Virus record (IMG/VR): IMGVR_UViG_3300050132_000038
Coordinates: 154,862-218,861 of that record
Length of the DNA: 64,000 nt
Direction: 5' to 3' (one strand)
Below the pieces are notes generated by a model. That model did no database searches, was not told the origin of the DNA, and saw only the letters and a list, made by a program, of their open reading frames with translations. The translations under genes and the position numbers were made by a program. Of this stretch, positions 7,682-55,415 are shown one piece after another; position 1 is the stretch's first letter, and the number at the start of each line of letters is the position of its first letter.

Positions 7682-8499
7682 ATGAGCTCTACAGTTGTTA
7701 GTCTCCAACCCAAGAAAGGATTTAAGCCTCAGTACTTTGGTGTAGTCTTCGACGCATACAACCCCCAGGTAGAAGCGCAGATGATGCGTGACTGCTTGGC
7801 AATGCAGAGGGTACTTCAAAATCATAAGCGCGAGCTAGTTATTGTGTGTGAGTCTGAAGCCCCTGACCGTATGCTCCGGGGTTTAAGTATTCGTAGAGTA
7901 CCTACGCCTACGCTAACAAAGTCCTGGGCGATGTACAAGACGAAAGCCGACTGGATGCCCGAACCAGAAGGTGCTGACGTGGTTGTACCCCGTGATCTGT
8001 ATCAACCACTGAAGAAGAATACACTTCGAGTATTAGACGAGGCACACACTAATGGGTACTATTTACCGCCTTTGGAAACATTCCTTAGGGCCGCTTGACC
8101 GTGAGGTCATGTGATAAGGTTTTGAATTGTCTGGAAACTCCTTAGAGCCGTGTAGACCACAACGTAGCTATGAAATATGGGCAAGCGTGAGGGTTAAGAA
8201 CTATACGGATTGGGCAACCAGCAGCGAAGTCCCGAATAGGGAAACGTTCAACGACTAGAGCGCAAGCTCGTACCCTCAAGTGAGGGGAAGCGGAACCCGT
8301 CTCTGTGAGACGAAGATATAGTCTGACCGTCTAGGGAAATCCTAGAGCAGTTCATAAGAGAACGCTTGAGTACTAACGACACTCAGGGAACACAGTGCAA
8401 GGAAGATTGAGTCCAGAAACAGTTTCACTACTTAGACCAGCACCTAATGGTTTTTCTGTAGGCTACGGTGATAACTGGTTGAGCGCGCTCTATAGTTAG
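7682..8499 (+). CDS. Intron-split hypothetical protein, exons 7682..8095 and 8398..8499 (171 aa spliced)
   Basis: Removing 8096..8397 joins ...FLRAA to QGRLSPETVSLLRPAPNGFSVGYGDNWLSALYS* in frame. Confidence 0.7.
8096..8397 (+). mobile_element. Group I intron, IA2-like, with no internal ORF
   Basis: P AATTGTCTGGAA (8125), Q AACCAGCAGC (8216), R GTTCAACGACTAG (8246), S AAGATATAGTCTG (8313). P3 GGTTTTG/CGGAACC, P7 GACTA/TAGTC, plus P7.1, P7.2, P8 and P9 hairpins. The 3' end TAACGAC...GAACACAGTG parallels my recollection of the T4 td intron end. The 5' splice site is inferred from frame; P1 is not cleanly resolved. Confidence 0.9.
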
Positions 8500-8514: not shown

Positions 8515-8614
8515 AATTTCACAGTGAGCATAAAGCGAAAAGGTTTAGCGGCCCTGTCATGCCAATACATGACTAGCTTTATGTCTCACTTCTTAAACCT
8601 ATTGGGGTTGCCAA
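8515..8614 (+). ncRNA. Conserved structured leader / candidate guide RNA of GIY-YIG gene 1
   Basis: Outer stem 8523-8536/8576-8590, AGG-N9-CCT loop 8541-8555, inner stem GTCATG/CATGAC; homologous to 16446-16550 with compensatory changes. Confidence 0.75.
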
Positions 8615-9721
8615 ATGTCTTCATCTAAAGAGCATACTTATGCTTTCCGTGTGCCATCGTCCTCACTTTTCGATAAAGCACTCACCAAATTAGTAAAACA
8701 AGTAGAGACGAAGGCTGCCTCTACTGACTCCGAGCTCGACCCAGATCCAATCTACTATGTGTACGTACTGCTTGATCCACGAAAACCTGGAGCATTTGAG
8801 TACACACTTCCCGGTAGCAAGCTAATCGCTTTTAAGTATCAACCCTTCTACGTGGGTAAGGGTAAAGGCGACAGGCTGAAGACTCATGTGAAGTCTACTC
8901 GTAAGCGTGTGGCTAGGGGTCGGAAGCTCACACATAAAGAAAACACGATTAAGAAGATCGAAAGTTTGGGTCTTAAAGTAATTGAGAAGCGTATAAGTTT
9001 CGACCTCCCTGAGGCAGTATCATTTGCCAAAGAGATAATGTTAATCTCCACAATTGGTAGAGTCGATCTGGGTACAGGATTACTTACTAATTGGTCAGGC
9101 GGCGGTGAGGGCGTTATAGATTTATCCCCTGAGACGATTCGGAAACATAGTGAATCGCAGAAGGCCGTACGTGCTGCGTTAACTCCTAAGCAAAATGCAA
9201 AGCGTAATAAGCTCACCAGCGAAAGCGTAGCAGCTGAGTGGAAAGCTAGATCACCTGACGCTAAGAAAGTCCACGCACAGAAGACCATTGCCCAGATGGA
9301 AGCACTAACGGATAAAGAGCGGCGACAACTTACTGCCCCTGCCCGTAAAGCATACAAGAAAGTTCTAGATTCCCTAACTGATGAAGAGCGCAACAAGCTA
9401 TTAGGTAGTGGATCTAAAGCTTGGTGGGCCTCTATGACAGACGAGGAACGAGAGTCACAGAACAAGAAGGCAGGTACTGCTCTGAGTAAGAGTCTACAGG
9501 CGAGATCCCCTGAGGCAAAAGCCAAGCACTATAACAATCAGCGTAACGCGCAGCTAGCTCGAATAGCTAATATGACTCCGGAAGAGCGGGAAGCTGAACG
9601 AGCACGAAAGCGCGCCCAACTTGACGCGCTACCTATACAGCAGTGTCCTCACTGTGGATATGAGGGTAAGGGGCCTAACATGAAGAAGTATCATTTTGAT
9701 AGATGCAAGTATAAGTCTTAA
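8615..9721 (+). CDS. Free-standing GIY-YIG-like homing endonuclease 1
   Basis: YYVYVLLDPRKPG...PFYVGKGKGDR...E...LLTN; helical basic repeats; C-terminal CPHC...H..C zinc finger. Confidence 0.8.
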   Translation: MSSSKEHTYAFRVPSSSLFDKALTKLVKQVETKAASTDSELDPDPIYYVYVLLDPRKPGAFEYTLPGSKLIAFKYQPFYVGKGKGDRLKTHVKSTRKRVARGRKLTHKENTIKKIESLGLKVIEKRISFDLPEAVSFAKEIMLISTIGRVDLGTGLLTNWSGGGEGVIDLSPETIRKHSESQKAVRAALTPKQNAKRNKLTSESVAAEWKARSPDAKKVHAQKTIAQMEALTDKERRQLTAPARKAYKKVLDSLTDEERNKLLGSGSKAWWASMTDEERESQNKKAGTALSKSLQARSPEAKAKHYNNQRNAQLARIANMTPEEREAERARKRAQLDALPIQQCPHCGYEGKGPNMKKYHFDRCKYKS

Positions 9722-9743
9722 TGTATACCTAAGGAGAAAACTC

Positions 9744-10025
9744 ATGGCAATGTTCCGCAAGAAGCCTGTCGTAGTAGAAGCCATTACCTTTGATGAACTA
9801 GTAGCGTATGGTATAGACTCAGGTGCAACTATTGTCGATAGAATGCCTTGGTCGTTCCGATACAACGGTCACCCTATTACTCACGAGAACGACAACTGCT
9901 ATTTGATCCTTACCTTAGAAGGTACTATGAACTTCACTAGGGAGGATATGCTAATCACCGGTGTTCAAGGTGAGATATACCCGTGTAAGCTCGACATCTT
10001 CAACGCTACATACGAGCCCACCTAA
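9744..10025 (+). CDS. Conserved phage protein (FRKKPVVVEA...GEIYPCKLDIF type)
   Basis: AAGGAG RBS before ATG 9744; familiar small phage family of unknown function. Confidence 0.7.
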   Translation: MAMFRKKPVVVEAITFDELVAYGIDSGATIVDRMPWSFRYNGHPITHENDNCYLILTLEGTMNFTREDMLITGVQGEIYPCKLDIFNATYEPT

Positions 10026-10416: not shown

Positions 10417-10539
10417 AGTTACCAAATTTCATATACGGTATTCCGTACATAGTACTTCATATAGCCCTGGAGCCCTGGCTGGCTTCCAAGAGGTTCGCAA
10501 GTCGGCCGTTCTCCAGTGCTCTGCTTTTAGGAGCACACA

Positions 10540-11505
10540 GTGTCCCTCTCAGATGCAATAAGCAGTGCTACAGCTTCATTCAATCCTAGTGCGTTTGCTT
10601 CAACGTTTGCTCCTGCGGCCGCTACTGGTGCTTTGTCCTTCTTAGGATCTAAGTTAGCGAGTGTAGCAGGCCCAGGTGCTCTTGGTACACTAGGTGCAGG
10701 TATGGCTCCTGGCAACGATTTGGCTGGCATACAAGCACGTAGTGATCCACTCCTATCCTTCTGTTGGTATGCACAGCTACCCACAATAACTCCTAACCCA
10801 ACTAGTAGCAATACAGTCAATCAGAACACTGGATCTATACTAGGTGGTATTCAGGCAGCAGCCTCATCTATAGCAGGTGCCGCAGTGTCTAGCTTGGCCT
10901 CTACTCTAGGTGGTTCCGTGTTTGCCTCAGGGTCAGCTGTTAGTCTTCCTTGGTACTACGTTGAAGAAGCACAGCTACCCTTCAGAAACTTTAGCTCGAA
11001 GCCCATCTTTAGGGAAGGTCGTGATAGACACTACGTAGATAAGTACAGTGTAGATAACCTAACACTCCACTTCTATCTGGACTCGTCGAACACAGTACTA
11101 CAGTATTTGCAAGCATGGCAGAACGCAATGATCTCCCCCTTTGCGGCTAACTCAGCAGCTACATCGGGTGGCGGATTCGGTAGACCCTCGCAGTACAAGC
11201 AGCCGATTTACATTTACATTTTAGACGTTACGAAAAGCCAGATGGCTATTGTTGAGTACACCGAATGTTGGCCTACTAATCTTAGTGCCTTACAGTTAGA
11301 CTCCGGTGCCTCTAACAGATTGATAGCGCAAGTCCCTTTCTCAGTTGGTGACGTGTTTGTAAACATAGTAGGTGTAGCCCAATCGCTAGTTAATGGGGTT
11401 CTAGCCAACCCCTCACAATTCAAAAACCTGTTAAGTGCAGCAGGATCAAAGGTAATGGGGAATGCAGCTTCCTCAGTTAGCAGTTCCATCGGGTCCATGA
11501 TCTAA
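10540..11505 (+). CDS. Tail tube-like / tube-associated protein
   Basis: GTG start after AGGAG; core NLTLHFYLD...YLQAWQN...YKQPIYIYILD...CWPTNL resembles T4 gp19/gp54-type folds. Confidence 0.6.
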   Translation: MSLSDAISSATASFNPSAFASTFAPAAATGALSFLGSKLASVAGPGALGTLGAGMAPGNDLAGIQARSDPLLSFCWYAQLPTITPNPTSSNTVNQNTGSILGGIQAAASSIAGAAVSSLASTLGGSVFASGSAVSLPWYYVEEAQLPFRNFSSKPIFREGRDRHYVDKYSVDNLTLHFYLDSSNTVLQYLQAWQNAMISPFAANSAATSGGGFGRPSQYKQPIYIYILDVTKSQMAIVEYTECWPTNLSALQLDSGASNRLIAQVPFSVGDVFVNIVGVAQSLVNGVLANPSQFKNLLSAAGSKVMGNAASSVSSSIGSMI

Positions 11506-16382: not shown

Positions 16383-16427
16383 ATGTCGAATATAAATCCG
16401 AACTACATGGTGACTATCGCCCCTTAG
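16383..16427 (+). pseudogene. Orphaned duplicate 5' end of gene 17615
   Basis: AAGGAG RBS followed by MSNINPNYMVTIAP*, versus MSNINPAYQVTIMQ at 17615, using different codons. Confidence 0.8.
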
Positions 16428-16445
16428 ACAACTTGCTACCCTGTC

Positions 16446-16550
16446 AATTTAATAGTGAGCATAGAGCGAAAGGGCCGGCCAGCCTCCGTCAGATCCATAT
16501 CATCTGACTAGCTTTATGTTTCACTTCTTAAATCGATATGGGGTTGTCAA
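16446..16550 (+). ncRNA. Conserved structured leader / candidate guide RNA of GIY-YIG gene 2
   Basis: Outer stem 16454-16467/16511-16525, AGG-N9-CCT loop ending at 16485, inner stem GTCAGAT/ATCTGAC. Confidence 0.75.
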
Positions 16551-17612
16551 ATGTCCACGAACTACCAGGAGCTCGCTGAGCTCTACTTCCACGAGTACGA
16601 CCAAAATTCCCTTGAAGACCCGTATGAAAAGAAGCGGCGCAAAGTCTTTAAAGAATTAGCAGCCGCTATAATAACCTCGGAATTCCCAGAGCTAGAAGCT
16701 CAGATCGCAATAGCTGCCTGGAACTTAACCGCAGAGTTAGCCGTTACTGGTAACAAAGGTAAAGGACGTAGACTTAAGTTAGATAAAATCTTCTACGTGT
16801 ACGTTCTTATGGATCCCCGTAAGCCAGGCCAGTGGATTATAGATCTCCCAGGTGGGAAAATTATTGAGCTTCCTTTCCTACCTTTCTACGTAGGAAAAGG
16901 GTACGGTGGTAGAATGAAGGCACACGCCCGACACGCCAGAGCTAAGCCCACTCCTGTAGCAGGTGAGCATAAAGCTAACACTATTCGTAGTCTTCATCGC
17001 CTTGGCCTAGAACCTATAGAGAAACGAGTCAGTGGATTCTCTATAGAGGCCGTAGCACTAATGAAGGAAGTGGGGTTAGTGAAAGCTGTTGGTCGTGGTA
17101 GGAATGGACCACTTACTAATCTTAGTGACGCCGGGGAGGGCCTAAGCGGCTACAAGCCCACTGAGGAAACTAAAGCTAAAATAGCTGCTAAGCTAGATCA
17201 GATCGTAGCCAAAAGAAAAGCTACCTATGCGGGCAAGAGTCAAGAAGAGTTAGACGCTATCAACGAGAAGAATAGCCTAGCGCATCGTGGTAAGAAACAG
17301 AGTGTTGAAACACTTGAGAAGCGAGTAGCACAATTACGTGGTACCACCCGCCCGACGGAAGTAGGTACTAAAATTAGTGCTTCTAAGATGGGGCATGAGA
17401 CCTCAGTAGAAACACGGGCAAAGCAGAGCGCTGCAAAGAAAGGTCGACCGGCGCTCAATAAGGGTACTACTCATACTGAGGAAACTAAAGCTAAGATGCG
17501 CGCAGCTAAAGCTGCTCAGCCTATAAAAATTTGTGAGCACTGTGGCACAGAAAGTAAAGGTACTGCCTTTACTAGATGGCATGGTGACAACTGTAAGTTT
17601 AAGAAGGATTAG
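16551..17612 (+). CDS. Free-standing GIY-YIG-like homing endonuclease 2
   Basis: FYVYVLMDPRKPG...PFYVGKGYGGR...PLTN; NUMOD3-like repeats (SEETKAK type); C-terminal CEHC...H..C zinc finger. Confidence 0.82.
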   Translation: MSTNYQELAELYFHEYDQNSLEDPYEKKRRKVFKELAAAIITSEFPELEAQIAIAAWNLTAELAVTGNKGKGRRLKLDKIFYVYVLMDPRKPGQWIIDLPGGKIIELPFLPFYVGKGYGGRMKAHARHARAKPTPVAGEHKANTIRSLHRLGLEPIEKRVSGFSIEAVALMKEVGLVKAVGRGRNGPLTNLSDAGEGLSGYKPTEETKAKIAAKLDQIVAKRKATYAGKSQEELDAINEKNSLAHRGKKQSVETLEKRVAQLRGTTRPTEVGTKISASKMGHETSVETRAKQSAAKKGRPALNKGTTHTEETKAKMRAAKAAQPIKICEHCGTESKGTAFTRWHGDNCKFKKD

Positions 17613-17614
17613 TT

Positions 17615-18511
17615 ATGAGCAATATTAACCCTGCGTATCAAGTCACAATTATGCAAAGCCATGTTCCAGCAGGGCAGACACCAATTATAGTACAGGCACC
17701 CTTACCTGAGACCTTTGCCTTCGACTCCAATGCTAGTTACGCTCAATCACTACCTCAGGGTCCTACCTCTGGTGCAGTTGCTCAGGTAGCCTCGGCCTTT
17801 GGTATTCGATTAGCAGTACCAGCAATGACAGCCCAGTTGTGGCAGGGTGCCTCAGAGACTACCTTAACCCTTGCTCTTGAATTTCATACAGAGAGTGATC
17901 CAGTAGCAGACGTACAAACACCTATTCTCAACTTGAATAGGTTGACCATGCCCTCTGTTAGTTCTAGTACAGGGATGTTGCAGTCTCCGGGGCCTTCCTT
18001 GAATGTGTCGCAGATAACTACACTGGTTAAGAATGCCGGTACGCAGTTAGTTAACACCGCAACGGCCGTAGGTAACGGGCAGGTGCAACCTACCGCAGCG
18101 TCGATGACAAACACCTCTGTTAGTGCTAACCAAGGTTCTAACACTCCGGTTACTCAGTCGAACACACAGAACCCGCAGTTGGGTAGCTCTCAGTATTGGA
18201 AGTCACAGGTAGCCAATCAGATTTCAATTCGGATTGGTAACTATATGTTCTTTGACTCGGTTGTTATAACAAACGTCCAGCAGACGTTCATGTCAAACAT
18301 AGATGCTGCAACCGGATTGCCGCATCATGCTACGGTGAACATAACGTTCAAGCCGTTCTTCATGCTGACTCAAGAAGACCTGTCCTCCGTGTTCATTAAC
18401 AATCAGTCGAAGGCGGGCCTACCAACTACTAGTAACATAGGTAGTGGCATTATGGGCCCTCCTGTCTCCTTGTCCCAAGCTGCACTACTAGCACAGACTA
18501 CTATTCGATAG
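17615..18511 (+). CDS. Baseplate / tail tube initiator-like protein
   Basis: Low-charge structural composition; SVVITNVQQTF...PHHATVNITF resembles gp48-like C-termini. Confidence 0.5.
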   Translation: MSNINPAYQVTIMQSHVPAGQTPIIVQAPLPETFAFDSNASYAQSLPQGPTSGAVAQVASAFGIRLAVPAMTAQLWQGASETTLTLALEFHTESDPVADVQTPILNLNRLTMPSVSSSTGMLQSPGPSLNVSQITTLVKNAGTQLVNTATAVGNGQVQPTAASMTNTSVSANQGSNTPVTQSNTQNPQLGSSQYWKSQVANQISIRIGNYMFFDSVVITNVQQTFMSNIDAATGLPHHATVNITFKPFFMLTQEDLSSVFINNQSKAGLPTTSNIGSGIMGPPVSLSQAALLAQTTIR

Positions 18512-52623: not shown

Positions 52624-54168
52624 ATGATTACCCTACAGGCTCGCGAGGCCATATACATCAAAAGAGAATCAATCCCTCGGGAGCTACGTGAGGAGTTAAT
52701 CGATAAGTTCACCTTTAGGTTCTATGAGGAGAAGGCGTGCGCCCAGTGTGAGTTCTATCAGGAGCGGCTAGAAGCCCCTGGTAGGCATCTCGAGACGTGC
52801 GATGAATGTGCAGCGTATAAAGGTGGAGCGCAGTTAGCCCAGGAAGTTAAGCTGGGCGATTCACGTTACATTAAGACGCCTATTGGAGACTCAGCTGGCT
52901 TGGTCAAGGTGTTGAACAAACATGACATTGAGTTCAAGGTAAAGAAGCACTACCCTCAGCACGAGATGAAACGGAAGTTCAAGTTCACTGGTGTTCTTAA
53001 GGACTTCCAACGAGAGGCGGTGGATGCTATCAAGAAAAAGAAGCGAGGTGTTGTTAAGGCACCGCCGCGATCTGGTAAGACTGTGTTGAGCACCGCTGCC
53101 ATTTGTGAGATTGGTAAGAAGACAATCATCATGGCTTCACAGCGTGACTGGCTTGTAGGATTCCAAGAAACCTTCATTGGTTCAGGTACCCAAGCACCGC
53201 TAACCAACTGCAAGCCCTCTCAGATTGGATTCGCTAAGACGCTAGAGGATTTCAAGAAGTACGATGTATGTCTGGTAACGGTACAGACCTTCTGGAGTGA
53301 GAAAGGCCAGAAGCTACTCCGCAAGATCAGGGATTGGTTCCCGGTTATCGTGGTCGATGAAATCCATACAGGCGGTGCTCCAAAGTATGCACGAGTGTTG
53401 GCCTCGATCAATTGCGAATACAAGATTGGTTTGTCCGGTACACCTAATCGTAAGGACGGTCGCTTCTCGTTGATGCGTGCCCTCATGGGTCCGAATCTAT
53501 ATGAGGCTAAGGTAGAGCGGTTACGCCCACACGTTAGATTAGTACGCACAGGCTATGTGCAGAAGAGTAAGGGGCAAGTGCCTTGGGTTCGCATGGTATC
53601 CTCCATCGAGAAAGACCCAAAGCGTTTGAAGTTGATAGCGCAGTGGGCGGTGAAGGACGCTAAAGCCGGGCACATGATTATCATACCCCTGGCGCAGATC
53701 ATTCCAGTCAAAGCATTGGTTATGGCTATAAATAAACTGGCAGGGAAGACAATAGCAGTAGCCTTCTGGGGCGGCTTGGGCAAGGACAAGAATGGCAACA
53801 AGCTCCGTGACGTCTATATCCAGAAAGCTCGCGAGTACAAGATCAAGGTGATCGTGGGTAATGCGAAGATGGTATCCACAGGTATAAACATCCCTAGAGC
53901 ATCGTGTCTATACGATGTGACGCCGAGTTCAAATTTGGAGAACTGCGAGCAACGAGTGTCGCGCATATTGACGCCGTACGCTGATAAACCCTTACCGGTA
54001 GTGCGCTACTTTTTGGACTCAGTGGGCGTACGTAGAAATTGTTTACGCAATGAATGGTATCATTGCGTACTACCAAAGTTTAGACCTGTTGTCTCAGAAG
54101 TAGATACGCAAGTTTTAAAATCCTATCTTTCCGGTAAAGAGTCTAGACAGGAGTACACAGAGTTATGA
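52624..54168 (+). CDS. SF2 DEAD/H-box helicase, UvsW-like
   Basis: FQREAV, APPRSGKT, VVDEIH, GLSGTP, TGINIP, QRVSR. Confidence 0.9.
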   Translation: MITLQAREAIYIKRESIPRELREELIDKFTFRFYEEKACAQCEFYQERLEAPGRHLETCDECAAYKGGAQLAQEVKLGDSRYIKTPIGDSAGLVKVLNKHDIEFKVKKHYPQHEMKRKFKFTGVLKDFQREAVDAIKKKKRGVVKAPPRSGKTVLSTAAICEIGKKTIIMASQRDWLVGFQETFIGSGTQAPLTNCKPSQIGFAKTLEDFKKYDVCLVTVQTFWSEKGQKLLRKIRDWFPVIVVDEIHTGGAPKYARVLASINCEYKIGLSGTPNRKDGRFSLMRALMGPNLYEAKVERLRPHVRLVRTGYVQKSKGQVPWVRMVSSIEKDPKRLKLIAQWAVKDAKAGHMIIIPLAQIIPVKALVMAINKLAGKTIAVAFWGGLGKDKNGNKLRDVYIQKAREYKIKVIVGNAKMVSTGINIPRASCLYDVTPSSNLENCEQRVSRILTPYADKPLPVVRYFLDSVGVRRNCLRNEWYHCVLPKFRPVVSEVDTQVLKSYLSGKESRQEYTEL

Positions 54169-55415
54169 TAATAACTAAGGCGCAAGAGAAGGCGCTAGAG
54201 CCTTACGAGAAGCGGTGGAGACACTCTAAGTACCCTGAGGTAGACGGGCAGGTACTAGCTATTGCTTACAATCTACTAGATGACGCAAATACCAGGGGGC
54301 ATACACTCTCTTTGAAGAAAGAGTTCTACGCCTATGCCCTACTGGATCCTCGAAAGCCGGGTCCCTATACGTACTGGATTGCGACTAAGCAAATAACATT
54401 CTCCTACGAACCATTCTATGTTGGGAAGGGGAAGGGCAATCGTATGTACAACCACGAGAACGCTGCTCATAAGTACAGGGAGAAGAACCCACATAATCCT
54501 AGTTCCAAGGTAGACACTATACTAGCTATTCAGGCGGCAGGATTAAAGGTGATAACTTATAAATTCTCCGATGCTCTTATAGAACCTATCGCCTTAGGTA
54601 AGGAAGAGATCCTTATAGAGGCCTTAGGTCAATTAAACGACAAATCTGGAATACTTACTAACATAGCATCAGACGGCAGGGGCTTTACCTGCAGTGCAGA
54701 TCGACGAGAGCATGCACTATCCGCCTGGAATAGTAAGCCAGCAAAAGAGAAGAAACGTATTACTGCTAAAAGAGTACAGTCCATGCTAACTCGCCCAGAT
54801 GGGGCGAAACTAGATACCCGGCAACGTAAACAGGAAACCTGGTCGAAGAAGAGTGACGAAGAACTGGAAGAAATTCGACAAAAGAAAATTCTTACGCACG
54901 CTAGTAGAGACCCGGCAGAAGTGCTCGTAAGCACTGCCGCCACTGTAGCCAACACAGACTACGAAGAAGCAAATAGGAAAAGAGCAGAGGCATACGCTAA
55001 GAAAAGCGATGAGGAGAAATTAGTAATAAAGAATAAAAGAGCCGAAACAATGGCGAGAAAGAGTGATAAAGAAAAGCTGGAAATCAGAGAAAATCTACGT
55101 AATGCTGCCGCGCGGAAGACATCCGAGGATAAAGAGGCTGACGAGGAAAAGAGGCAAGCCACTCGGGATTCTCGTACAGCTGAATATGAAGCTGACTATA
55201 GAGCTAAGCTCAGGGCGGGTGCCGCGAATAGCAAAGTTACAAAAATAACGGACAGACAGGTTGTAGAAATATTTCTCAAATGTCAAAAGTATAAGGATAC
55301 CCTTAATGTTAGAAAGAAGTTTGCAGAACGCTTCGGGGTTAGTTTAAAGACTGTTAGTGACATAGCGAGTGGCAAACAACGTAAGTTTGTTCTACAGGCA
55401 CACGGACTTATATGA
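54165..55415 (+). CDS. Free-standing GIY-YIG-like homing endonuclease 3
   Basis: FYAYALLDPRKPG...PFYVGKGKGNR...ILTN; helical repeats; C-terminal HTH-like RFGVSLKTVSDI. Confidence 0.8.
   Translation: MIITKAQEKALEPYEKRWRHSKYPEVDGQVLAIAYNLLDDANTRGHTLSLKKEFYAYALLDPRKPGPYTYWIATKQITFSYEPFYVGKGKGNRMYNHENAAHKYREKNPHNPSSKVDTILAIQAAGLKVITYKFSDALIEPIALGKEEILIEALGQLNDKSGILTNIASDGRGFTCSADRREHALSAWNSKPAKEKKRITAKRVQSMLTRPDGAKLDTRQRKQETWSKKSDEELEEIRQKKILTHASRDPAEVLVSTAATVANTDYEEANRKRAEAYAKKSDEEKLVIKNKRAETMARKSDKEKLEIRENLRNAAARKTSEDKEADEEKRQATRDSRTAEYEADYRAKLRAGAANSKVTKITDRQVVEIFLKCQKYKDTLNVRKKFAERFGVSLKTVSDIASGKQRKFVLQAHGLI

What the first reader, a model, noticed from the sequence alone, without database searches (positions are those of the whole stretch)
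8515..8614. Conserved covarying ~100-nt RNA structure upstream of two endonuclease genes
Independent of any guide role, the fold is supported by compensatory change. The outer 14-bp stem is AGTGAGCATAAAGC/GCTTTATGTCTCACT in copy 1 and AGTGAGCATAGAGC/GCTTTATGTTTCACT in copy 2, where the changes keep G-U pairs. The inner stem is GTCATG/CATGAC versus GTCAGAT/ATCTGAC. Both copies start at a variant of the AATTTCATA motif (AATTTCACA, AATTTAATA) and end in GGGGTTG(C/T)CAA-ATG. The two proteins are much more diverged than their leaders. I do not recognise this as a known riboswitch or Rfam family. A simpler role is translational or autogenous control, as known for RBS-sequestering hairpins of T4 endonuclease genes.
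Basis: partly seen in the sequence, partly recalled or inferred. Interest (0 to 1): 0.8.

Follow-up and report, generated by a model that had tools for sequence, protein, structure and literature searches.

The report
Structured RNA leader of phage homing-endonuclease genes
The two ~100-nt repeats are copies of a previously uncatalogued, strongly covarying three-way-junction RNA that sits immediately upstream of free-standing homing-endonuclease genes of several nuclease families in large phages. It most likely acts as a portable leader that controls expression of these selfish genes.

Summary
The window is the last 64 kb of a 218.9-kb phage from peat, distantly related to phiRSL1 and BCSR5. 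It holds two copies (8515-8617 and 16446-16553), each ending at the ATG of a GIY-YIG homing endonuclease (HEG).

I found 20 distinct copies, including two in cultured phages: Burkholderia phage BCSR5 and Erwinia phage pEa_SNUABM_22.

All 20 fold into the same three-way junction:
- P1, variable in sequence and length (4-15 bp).
- A GAAAA joining strand.
- P2, a 12-nt hairpin.
- A CU joining strand.
- P3, a 6-7 bp hairpin.
- A UA joining strand, then the 3' strand of P1.

After the junction come a G-poor linker and a short hairpin that holds the 3' half of the Shine-Dalgarno (SD) sequence.

Covariation is strong: 93.5% of cells are paired, 24 of 27 pairs change on both sides, and no shuffle reaches this. 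G·U pairs outnumber A·C 25 to 5, so the sense RNA is what folds. Nothing in Rfam 15 matches.

The downstream genes are GIY-YIG, HNH and phrog_3339/DUF7487-type endonucleases. The RNA is therefore a module shared across nuclease families, not the partner of one protein.

The function is inferred. The best guess is a cis-acting insulator or attenuator of HEG translation. Factor binding and RNA processing remain open.

HEG1 is free-standing and lies just downstream of an ORF-less group I intron.

The parts
8515..8523 (+). AATTTCACA box: a one-mismatch variant of the AATTTCATA promoter-like motif of this phage. Its last base is the first base of P1.
   Evidence: the exact motif is enriched, and 6 of 8 genomic copies lie 20-37 nt upstream of an SD plus start codon on the coding strand. 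The box is absent in 7 of 20 family members.
8523..8590 (+). Copy 1 three-way junction. P1 is 8523-8536 paired with 8576-8590. J1/2 (GAAAA) is 8537-8541. P2 is 8542-8553. J2/3 (CU) is 8554-8555. P3 is 8556-8573. J3/1 (UA) is 8574-8575.
   Evidence: Fold with z = -4.5. Covariation in 20 sequences. An independent MAFFT/RNAalifold run recovers the same core.
8591..8614 (+). G-poor linker (TCTTA), then the short SD hairpin: 8596-8600 pairs with 8605-8609. The SD (GGGG) is at 8604-8607.
   Evidence: The hairpin covaries with the SD type.
8615..9721 (+). HEG1: free-standing GIY-YIG homing endonuclease, 368 aa.
   Evidence: Pfam PF22945, E = 1.7e-11.
16446..16454 (+). AATTTAATA box of copy 2.
16454..16525 (+). 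Copy 2 three-way junction. P1 is 16454-16467 paired with 16511-16525. J1/2 is 16468-16472. P2 is 16473-16484. P3 is 16488-16508. J3/1 is 16509-16510.
   Evidence: Fold with z = -3.9. CM score 129 bits.
16526..16550 (+). Linker and SD region of copy 2. The SD (GGGG) is at 16540-16543.
16551..17612 (+). HEG2: free-standing GIY-YIG plus NUMOD3 homing endonuclease, 353 aa.
   Evidence: Pfam PF22945 and PF07460. PHROG 'homing endonuclease'.
16384..16428 (+). 14-codon remnant ORF (MSNINPNYMVTIAP*) that duplicates the N-terminus of gene 17615-18511 (MSNINPAYQVTIM...). It is a footprint of the HEG2 cassette insertion and marks the cassette's 5' boundary.
8072..8397 (+). Context: an ORF-less group I intron in gene 7682-8499, a homologue of phiRSL1 ORF209. 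Exon 2 (8398-8499) ends 15 nt before the leader.
   Evidence: Rfam RF00028, 65.3 bits. The spliced protein aligns across the junction with phiRSL1, BCSR5 and BcepSauron homologues. A relative's contig diverges exactly after 8071.

Best explanation
The repeats belong to a conserved structured RNA: a compact three-way junction followed by a short hairpin that occludes the SD. This RNA forms the 5' leader of free-standing homing-endonuclease gene cassettes in large phages.

Shown:
- It is the sense strand that folds.
- It lies in the gap between an upstream co-directional gene and the endonuclease ATG.
- It lies inside the inserted cassette.
- It is shared by endonucleases of different catalytic families.

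Inferred:
- It acts in cis on the polycistronic or promoter-initiated mRNA.
- The stable junction placed right after the upstream stop codon insulates the endonuclease cistron from ribosomes and from the unfolding that comes with translation of the highly expressed upstream gene.
- The small SD hairpin keeps initiation weak, so the selfish nuclease is made at a low level or late.
- The module spreads between cassettes by recombination.

In this phage lineage a promoter-like AATTT box abuts the junction. The leader may therefore also be the 5' end of a dedicated late transcript.
For: Structure:
- 20 distinct sequences give 93.5% paired cells, 24 of 27 pairs with changes on both sides, 155 such cells, 0 of 500 shuffles as good, and slid controls of 0.094 or less against 0.694.
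- De novo MAFFT plus RNAalifold recovers P1, P2 and P3.

Strand: 25 G·U pairs against 5 A·C.

Position:
- In 18 of 20 copies the model ends on an ATG, and in every locus that continues past the leader an ORF opens there or within a few tens of nt. L091 and L100 end before one can be read.
- In about 15 of 20 a same-strand ORF stops from 2 nt inside to 40 nt before the model start.

Downstream genes:
- 14 of the 18 readable downstream ORFs match GIY-YIG: 13 above Pfam's cut-off and L092 weakly. The Erwinia protein is counted from a tblastn match to HEG1.
- HNH in L098. The phrog_3339/phrog_559 type in L104 and in BCSR5 QRE00280.

SD hairpin: predicted in 8 of 10 tails, and its C-G changes to U-A when the SD changes from GGGG to GGAG.

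Cassette membership: the remnant 5' end of the target gene lies upstream of leader 2.

Leaderless relatives are instead overlapped with or tightly coupled to the upstream gene: the third HEG at 54165 (ATGA overlap) and L077 (15-nt gap).

Precedent: T-even HEGs are held down by RNA structures at or next to the RBS, including a stable hairpin just upstream of the RBS of seg43(25) (PMC2988022).
Against: - No expression data exist. No RNA run was listed, so the transcript ends and any effect on translation are untested.
- A mere insulator does not need an invariant junction (GAAAA, CU-G, UA) or a nearly invariant P2 loop (CGGCCA in 15 of 20). That pattern suggests a specific tertiary fold or a binding partner.
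- The junction does not contain the SD. The SD hairpin is weak (-2 to -8 kcal/mol).
- Predicted SD accessibility is low in all transcript models and does not differ systematically between long and short forms.
Confidence: 0.45

Rival explanations
1. The junction is a binding platform (an aptamer) for a trans factor common to these infections: a host or phage RNA-binding protein, or a small metabolite. Binding would switch endonuclease translation, as in a riboswitch or an r-protein-leader mechanism.
For: The junction strands and the P2 loop are nearly invariant, while the helices covary freely in sequence and length. This is the conservation pattern of aptamers. The core is about 45 nt, a typical size. 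The SD hairpin follows within 5-10 nt.
Against: There is no conserved alternative pairing that competes with P1. P1 ranges from 4 to 15 bp, and at the long end it is too stable to switch. The complementarity between the P2 3' strand and the SD is not compensated when the SD changes to GGAG. Nothing in Rfam is similar. Binding by the endonuclease itself is unlikely because several nuclease families share the RNA.
Confidence: 0.2
2. It is an RNA processing or stability element. An endoribonuclease such as RNase E cuts in the G-poor single-stranded linker, or in the AAUUU box. The junction then remains as a protective 3' cap on the upstream mRNA, or as a 5' cap on the endonuclease mRNA. This uncouples the selfish cistron from its essential neighbours.
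For: The linker between P1 and the SD hairpin is consistently U/A/C-rich and G-poor, and it is flanked by structures. The element sits right after upstream stop codons. AAUUU fits the RN|WUU RNase E preference (my own knowledge, not tested).
Against: There are no RNA ends data. The AATTT box is missing in 7 of 20 copies. P1 can be as short as 4-6 bp, so RNase III is an unlikely cutter. A simple hairpin would serve as a cap.
Confidence: 0.17
3. It is a T4-type temporal switch. A C-rich anti-SD just upstream of the promoter-like box pairs with the SD, clamped by the junction, in read-through transcripts. Transcripts started at the box lack the anti-SD and are translated late.
For: L073 (CAACUCC with GGAGUUG) and L072 (UAGCUCC with GGAGUUA) have 7-bp anti-SD/SD pairings with a compensatory difference, p = 0.02 and 0.05 against shuffles. 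MFE folds of long forms of copy 2, L055 and L068 sequester the SD. The T4 precedent is described in PMC2988022.
Against: Across the 10 sequences tested the mean z is -0.3. Copies 1 and 2 are no better than shuffled upstream sequence. The box, and hence the promoter logic, is absent from many members. If the box were a -10-like element, transcripts would lose part of the covarying P1 5' strand, and all of it in L056.
Confidence: 0.1
4. It is a DNA-level signal (an operator, homing-site mimic or cruciform), or a catalytic or guide RNA for the nuclease.
For: I-TevI uses a DNA operator that overlaps its promoter (PMC2988022). P2 in 13 of 20 copies contains the 8-bp palindrome GGCCGGCC. The three-way junction, with possible loop-loop contact, superficially recalls a hammerhead.
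Against: Helices covary in sequence rather than being conserved. The excess of G·U over A·C points to one folded strand. The leader is the same at different insertion sites and with different nucleases. The hammerhead CUGANGA core is absent (direct reading), and Rfam ribozyme models give no hit. Both strands of the variable P1 are paired, which leaves no free guide.
Confidence: 0.05

Closest known systems
RBS-sequestering regulatory hairpins of T-even phage homing-endonuclease genes (I-TevI, I-TevII, I-TevIII, segB, Aeh1 mobE), and the stable pre-RBS hairpin of seg43(25) (review PMC2988022)
   Same: A cis RNA structure immediately 5' of a phage homing-endonuclease ORF. The SD is partly buried in a hairpin. 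A phage promoter-like element is next to it. The presumed purpose is low or late expression of a selfish nuclease embedded in polycistronic late mRNA.
   Different: Here the main element is a branched three-way junction with invariant joining strands, not a simple hairpin, and it lies upstream of the SD rather than over it. It is homologous across distant phages (hosts Burkholderia, Erwinia and uncultured peat or soil bacteria) and across nuclease families. The T-even hairpins are gene-specific and not homologous to each other.
Three-way-junction aptamers and ribozymes (purine riboswitch, hammerhead)
   Same: Size (about 45-70 nt). Two hairpins on a closing stem. Conserved joining strands with covarying helices.
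   Different: No sequence or CM similarity. The hammerhead core is absent. No ligand or expression-platform competition was identified.
HEARO / omega-RNA and other nuclease-associated RNAs (IscB, TnpB)
   Same: A conserved structured RNA genetically linked to a mobile nuclease gene.
   Different: Those RNAs are guides for RuvC or HNH-RuvC nucleases, and they are larger. The nucleases here are classical protein-guided HEGs (GIY-YIG, HNH, phrog_3339 type), and no guide segment is visible.
Collaborative / trans homing arrangements (cyanophage psbA intron plus free-standing F-CphI; T4 mobE with the nrdB intron)
   Same: A free-standing HEG next to a gene that carries an ORF-less group I intron. 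This is seen in the window, in G001 and in L081.
   Different: This concerns the locus context, not the RNA leader itself. The target of HEG1 is not known.

Membership tests
Any Rfam 15 family | A covariance-model match at or near the gathering score | tested here: not met
   In gathering mode the whole window gives only Intron_gpI at 8072-8345. In E-value mode both leaders give only noise, E > 1.
Group I intron (as a peripheral domain) | The element lies between the 5' and 3' splice sites | tested here: not met
   The intron is 8072-8397. Exon 2 (8398-8499) and its stop codon separate it from the leader. Copy 2 and most other copies have no intron nearby.
T-even HEG RBS-sequestering hairpin | The regulatory helix includes the Shine-Dalgarno sequence | tested here: inconclusive
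   The short hairpin after the junction pairs the 3' half of the SD and covaries with it. The large junction does not touch the SD.
T-even HEG RBS-sequestering hairpin | A late promoter placed so that late transcripts lack the inhibitory 5' strand | tested here: inconclusive
   The promoter-like box lies 5' of both the junction and the SD hairpin. An upstream anti-SD is significant only in L072 and L073. Transcription starts are unknown.
T-even HEG RBS-sequestering hairpin | Translation restricted to late infection | not testable with these tools
   No RNA or ribosome data. No RNA run was listed.
Hammerhead ribozyme | A three-way junction with CUGANGA, GAAA and UH core strands | tested here: not met
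   GAAA(A) is present, but the third joining strand is only UA and CUGANGA is absent in all 20. No Rfam hammerhead hit.
Riboswitch | A conserved ligand pocket plus a mutually exclusive expression platform | tested here: inconclusive
   The junction is conserved. No conserved alternative pairing with P1 or the SD was found. Ligand binding cannot be tested here.
Guide RNA of a mobile nuclease (omega-RNA / HEARO) | Association with IscB or TnpB and a free variable guide segment | tested here: not met
   The nucleases are GIY-YIG, HNH and phrog_3339 types. The variable P1 is fully base-paired.

The most novel reading that the evidence does not exclude
The junction is a new class of portable riboregulator specific to selfish nuclease cassettes. 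It would have a defined tertiary fold that binds a host or phage factor or metabolite, or that is cleaved. It would license endonuclease expression only in the right cellular state, for example late or replicating co-infected cells. It would have been exchanged horizontally between GIY-YIG, HNH and PD-(D/E)XK-like homing endonucleases in phages of different hosts.
Probability: 0.25. Interest if true: 0.8.

Novelty: new variant of a known kind. Interest (0 to 1): 0.62.

Why it matters
Homing endonucleases are abundant selfish genes in phages. How they are kept harmless is known only for a few T-even cases, and each of those has its own simple hairpin.

A single homologous RNA module shared by several nuclease families and by phages of different hosts implies a common, transferable solution to that problem. 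It also adds a new structured-RNA family with unusually clean covariation.

Two practical points follow. The motif marks free-standing HEG cassettes in metagenomic phage genomes, and assemblers break contigs at it. And it is present in two cultured phages, BCSR5 and pEa_SNUABM_22, so the function can be tested directly.

Tried and rejected
- blastn and megablast of the leader and of the locus against 50,697 phage records found nothing. Only a 51-nt core query at E <= 10 later found BCSR5 and the Erwinia phage.
- An exact 24-nt pattern in viral contigs found nothing.
- My first gapped pattern was mis-registered and wasted one scan. The corrected versions worked.
- Most metagenome pattern hits were a conserved GTPase gene.
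- All 97 genome-contig hits failed a structure screen, being coding sequence or chance. I have no evidence for the motif in bacterial genomes.
- No RNA-seq run was listed. Read laying gave only DNA contigs.
- HEG relatives in 37 viral loci and several metagenome contigs have no leader.
- Long-range anti-SD helix: not significant family-wide.
- P2-to-SD pseudoknot: 11 of 12 complementary in copy 1, but not compensated in the GGAG-type members.
- Box-to-linker pairing: present in copy 2, L073, L055 and G001 only.
- No sigma-70 promoter or intrinsic terminator falls on the leaders.
- AATTTCATA is not enriched in G001 or G002.
- The leader shows no similarity to the intron insertion site (direct reading).
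- The supplement of the 8,495-motif IMG/VR catalogue (PMC10690425) is not held. I could not check whether an unnamed automatic prediction overlaps this motif.

Full report
**Where the window lies.** The window is the last 64 kb of a 218,861-bp virus record with direct terminal repeats. DNA runs that hold it are peat metagenomes. Its proteins find distant relatives in the jumbo myoviruses Ralstonia phiRSL1, Burkholderia BCSR5, BcepSauron and Achromobacter Motura.

**The observation.**
- The sequence at 8515-8617 recurs at 16446-16553, with 78% identity by blastn and 88% in the trimmed alignment. Neither blastn nor a covariance model finds a further copy in the genome.
- Both copies fold into a three-way junction: a 14-bp outer stem with one bulged U, and two inner hairpins. 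The cores fold better than dinucleotide shuffles, with z = -4.5 and -3.9.
- Each copy ends at the ATG of a GIY-YIG endonuclease ORF: 8615-9721, and 16551-17612 (which also has NUMOD3). The two proteins are 34% identical.
The two outer-stem differences are one-sided changes to G·U. Only the inner hairpin shows true double changes between the two copies.

**Context, corrected.**
- Rfam finds one family in the window: a group I intron at 8072-8345.
- Aligning the interrupted protein with uninterrupted homologues places the 5' splice site after 8071 (…YYLPP) and the terminal G at 8397. Exon 2 (8398-8499) continues QGRLSPETVSLLRPAPNGF…. A relative's contig is identical up to 8071 and then diverges.
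- The intron therefore carries no ORF. The leader and HEG1 lie downstream of the host gene's stop codon, so HEG1 is free-standing.
- Copy 2 follows a 14-codon ORF whose product (MSNINPNYMVTIAP) duplicates the N-terminus of the gene after HEG2 (MSNINPAYQVTIM…). This is the footprint of a cassette, leader plus HEG, inserted into the 5' end of that gene.

**More copies.**
- A model built from the two copies found a third in a related 215-kb phage contig (G001). It sits at the same genomic position, after the same intron-bearing gene and before a GIY-YIG ORF, and its outer stem has a completely different sequence but is still paired.
- Pattern scans based on the junction core gave further members, as did look-ups of contigs that encode HEG2 homologues.
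- A second model (R2) then found the element in two cultured phages:
  - Burkholderia phage BCSR5, MW460245.1 149335-149435, upstream of QRE00280.1.
  - Erwinia phage pEa_SNUABM_22, MZ443785.1 106265-106372, upstream of UAW96630.1.
- A broader pattern in viral contigs, screened for structure by script, added eight more types. In total there are 20 distinct sequences.
- The same pattern in 185,579 bacterial and archaeal genomes gave only coding or chance matches.

**The structure.**
- On the 20-sequence alignment, 93.5% of cells are standard pairs. 24 of 27 pairs have changes on both sides, in 155 cells. No shuffle out of 500 reaches any of the measures. Sliding the 3' partners drops the covariation score from 0.694 to 0.094 or less.
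- That alignment was fitted to the model, so I also ran MAFFT plus RNAalifold on the raw sequences. This independently recovers inner P1, P2 and P3, and 11 of its 14 pairs keep pairing through double changes.
- P1 varies from 4 to 15 bp and in every position.
- The nearly invariant parts are the joining strands GAAAA, C(U/C) and UA, the first G-C pair of P3, and the 12-nt P2 hairpin, whose loop is CGGCCA in 15 of 20.
- In the junction helices G·U pairs outnumber A·C 25 to 5. It is therefore the strand sense to the endonuclease gene that folds, as RNA.
- Neither gathering-mode nor permissive Rfam searches give any match.

**What follows the junction.**
- After P1 comes a short G-poor linker (UCUUA and the like), then a 4-6 bp hairpin whose 3' arm is the 3' half of the SD. 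Folding the tails alone predicts this hairpin in 8 of 10 sequences.
- Where the SD is GGAG rather than GGGG, the partner changes from AACC to AACU. The SD hairpin is therefore selected for. It is weak, at -2 to -8 kcal/mol.

**The AATTT box.**
- AATTTCATA occurs 7 times in the window against 0.52 expected. Of the 8 exact copies in the genome, 6 lie 20-37 nt upstream of an SD and start codon on the coding strand. In this phage it is best read as a late, structural-gene promoter.
- The leaders begin with one-mismatch variants that abut P1.
- 13 of 20 family members have an A(A/G)TTT-like box. BCSR5, the Erwinia phage and five others do not. The exact motif is not enriched in G001 or G002.
- The box is therefore a lineage-specific addition, not part of the conserved RNA.
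- If it works like a -10 element, transcripts would start inside P1. That conflicts with the covariation of the P1 5' strand. Either the start lies at the very edge of the box, or the selected structure forms in read-through transcripts.

**The genes served.**
- In 18 of 20 copies the model ends on an ATG, and in every locus that continues past the leader an ORF opens there or within a few tens of nt. L091 and L100 end before an ORF can be read.
- 14 of the 18 readable ORFs match GIY-YIG: 13 above Pfam's cut-off and L092 weakly. The Erwinia protein was not scanned itself and is counted from a tblastn match to HEG1.
- L098 encodes an I-HmuI-like HNH homing endonuclease.
- L104 (phrog_559 and phrog_3339, E = 1e-118 and 1e-101) and BCSR5 QRE00280 belong to another homing-endonuclease type. 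The BCSR5 protein matches DUF7487 and phrog_3339 and has a PD…EVK motif by my reading.
- The L088 type, found in 8 contigs, encodes a protein with a ParB-like DGGNR motif. That is my reading, and no family hit supports it.
- In about 15 of 20 copies a same-strand ORF stops from 2 nt inside to 40 nt before the model start.
- Relatives of these HEGs that lack the leader are overlapped with or tightly coupled to the upstream gene. Examples are the third GIY-YIG gene at 54165-55415 (ATGA overlap) and L077 (15-nt gap).

**How it most likely works.**
- Shown: a sense-strand structured RNA, carried inside free-standing HEG cassettes. It lies between the upstream stop codon and the HEG start, and an SD-occluding hairpin is attached to it.
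- Inferred: it acts in cis to keep the nuclease cistron weakly or late translated, and to uncouple it from its highly expressed neighbours. The logic is that of the T-even HEG hairpins and the pre-RBS hairpin of seg43(25) (PMC2988022).
- I hold this at about 0.45. An insulator would not need an invariant junction and P2 loop. That pattern is what a specific tertiary fold that binds a factor would show (rival 1, 0.2). The G-poor linker between two structures would also suit an endonucleolytic processing site (rival 2, 0.17).
- The T4-type switch pairs an anti-SD upstream of the promoter with the SD. It is convincing in L072 and L073 (7-bp helices with a compensatory difference, p = 0.02 and 0.05). 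It is no better than shuffled sequence in copies 1 and 2, and the mean z over ten sequences is -0.3. I keep it as a sub-family feature (0.1).
- Autogenous control by the endonuclease, DNA-level roles, a hammerhead-like ribozyme and a guide role are all disfavoured. The reasons are the multi-family association, the strand-specific wobble pairs, the missing CUGANGA core and the fully paired variable stem.

**Novelty.**
- The functional kind, a cis RNA structure that limits expression of a phage homing endonuclease, is known.
- Four things are new: a branched, homologous, widely distributed RNA family; sharing across nuclease families; spread across phages of different hosts; and absence from Rfam 15.
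- An automatic catalogue of 8,495 unnamed candidate RNAs from IMG/VR exists (PMC10690425). Its main text does not discuss endonuclease-associated motifs, and its supplement was not available. An unnamed overlap cannot be excluded.

**Limits.**
- There are no expression data of any kind.
- E-values of my models are rough.
- The collections were reached only through patterns and protein relatives. The true distribution, and the fraction of HEGs with the leader, are therefore unknown.
- The L088-type and DUF7487 nuclease assignments rest on family names and on my reading of motifs.

Noticed in passing
window 7682-8499 (intron 8072-8397); L052:1059-1348; L081:1975-2247: There is an ORF-less group I intron in the homologue of phiRSL1 ORF209, with free-standing HEG1 about 115 nt downstream of the host gene. 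This resembles collaborative or trans homing. The related phage G001 has an intron in the same gene, but inserted 6 codons further on (after QGRLSP), again followed by leader plus HEG. L081 has an intron about 260 nt downstream of its HEG.
   Followed up: partly
window 16384-16428 vs 17615-17660: A 14-codon remnant ORF with its own RBS duplicates the N-terminus of the gene downstream of HEG2. About 10 of 13 residues are identical, and the DNA has diverged at synonymous sites. It is the footprint of the cassette insertion or of a co-conversion tract.
   Followed up: partly
window 2807, 10425, 17880, 20796, 35202(-), 48769, 62308(-); genome position 6111(-): The AATTTCATA motif is enriched and mostly lies 20-37 nt upstream of SD plus start codon, so it is a candidate late promoter of this phage. 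The copy at 10425 is followed by a 106-nt leader before the gp19-like tail tube gene (10540-11505). I did not examine that leader.
   Followed up: partly
window 54165-55415: A third GIY-YIG endonuclease gene (416 aa). Its start overlaps the stop of the upstream gene (ATGA), and it has no leader.
   Followed up: partly
L074:1-17, L075:1-17: Two metagenome contigs that encode HEG2 homologues begin only 16 nt before the ATG. Assemblies appear to break at the repeated leader, so the motif is probably under-represented in contig collections.
   Followed up: no
window 9725-10019: A relative in run X4 has a contig that skips 293 nt, which removes most of the small ORF 9745-10025 after HEG1. Other contigs diverge just before 9745. 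This looks like a variable segment next to the cassette.
   Followed up: no
L084:1599-2516 (BCSR5 QRE00280.1); L104:7018-8481; L088:2666-3550: Several annotated 'hypothetical proteins' behind the leader look like homing endonucleases of less familiar families. They are DUF7487 with a PD…EVK motif and repeated GV.NP.Q modules, DUF723 plus zinc ribbon (phrog_559/3339), and a protein with a ParB-like DGGNR motif. The leader could serve as a flag for finding new HEG families.
   Followed up: partly
P2 hairpin, e.g. window 16473-16484: In 13 of 20 copies P2 reads GGCCGGCCAGC(C/U), which contains the 8-bp palindrome GGCCGGCC. Together with L081 (GGACGGCCAUCC), 14 copies have the self-complementary GGCC in the P2 loop, and L078 has AGCU there. 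A loop-loop (kissing) contact between two RNAs, or with the C-rich P3 loop, is conceivable. I did not test it.
   Followed up: no
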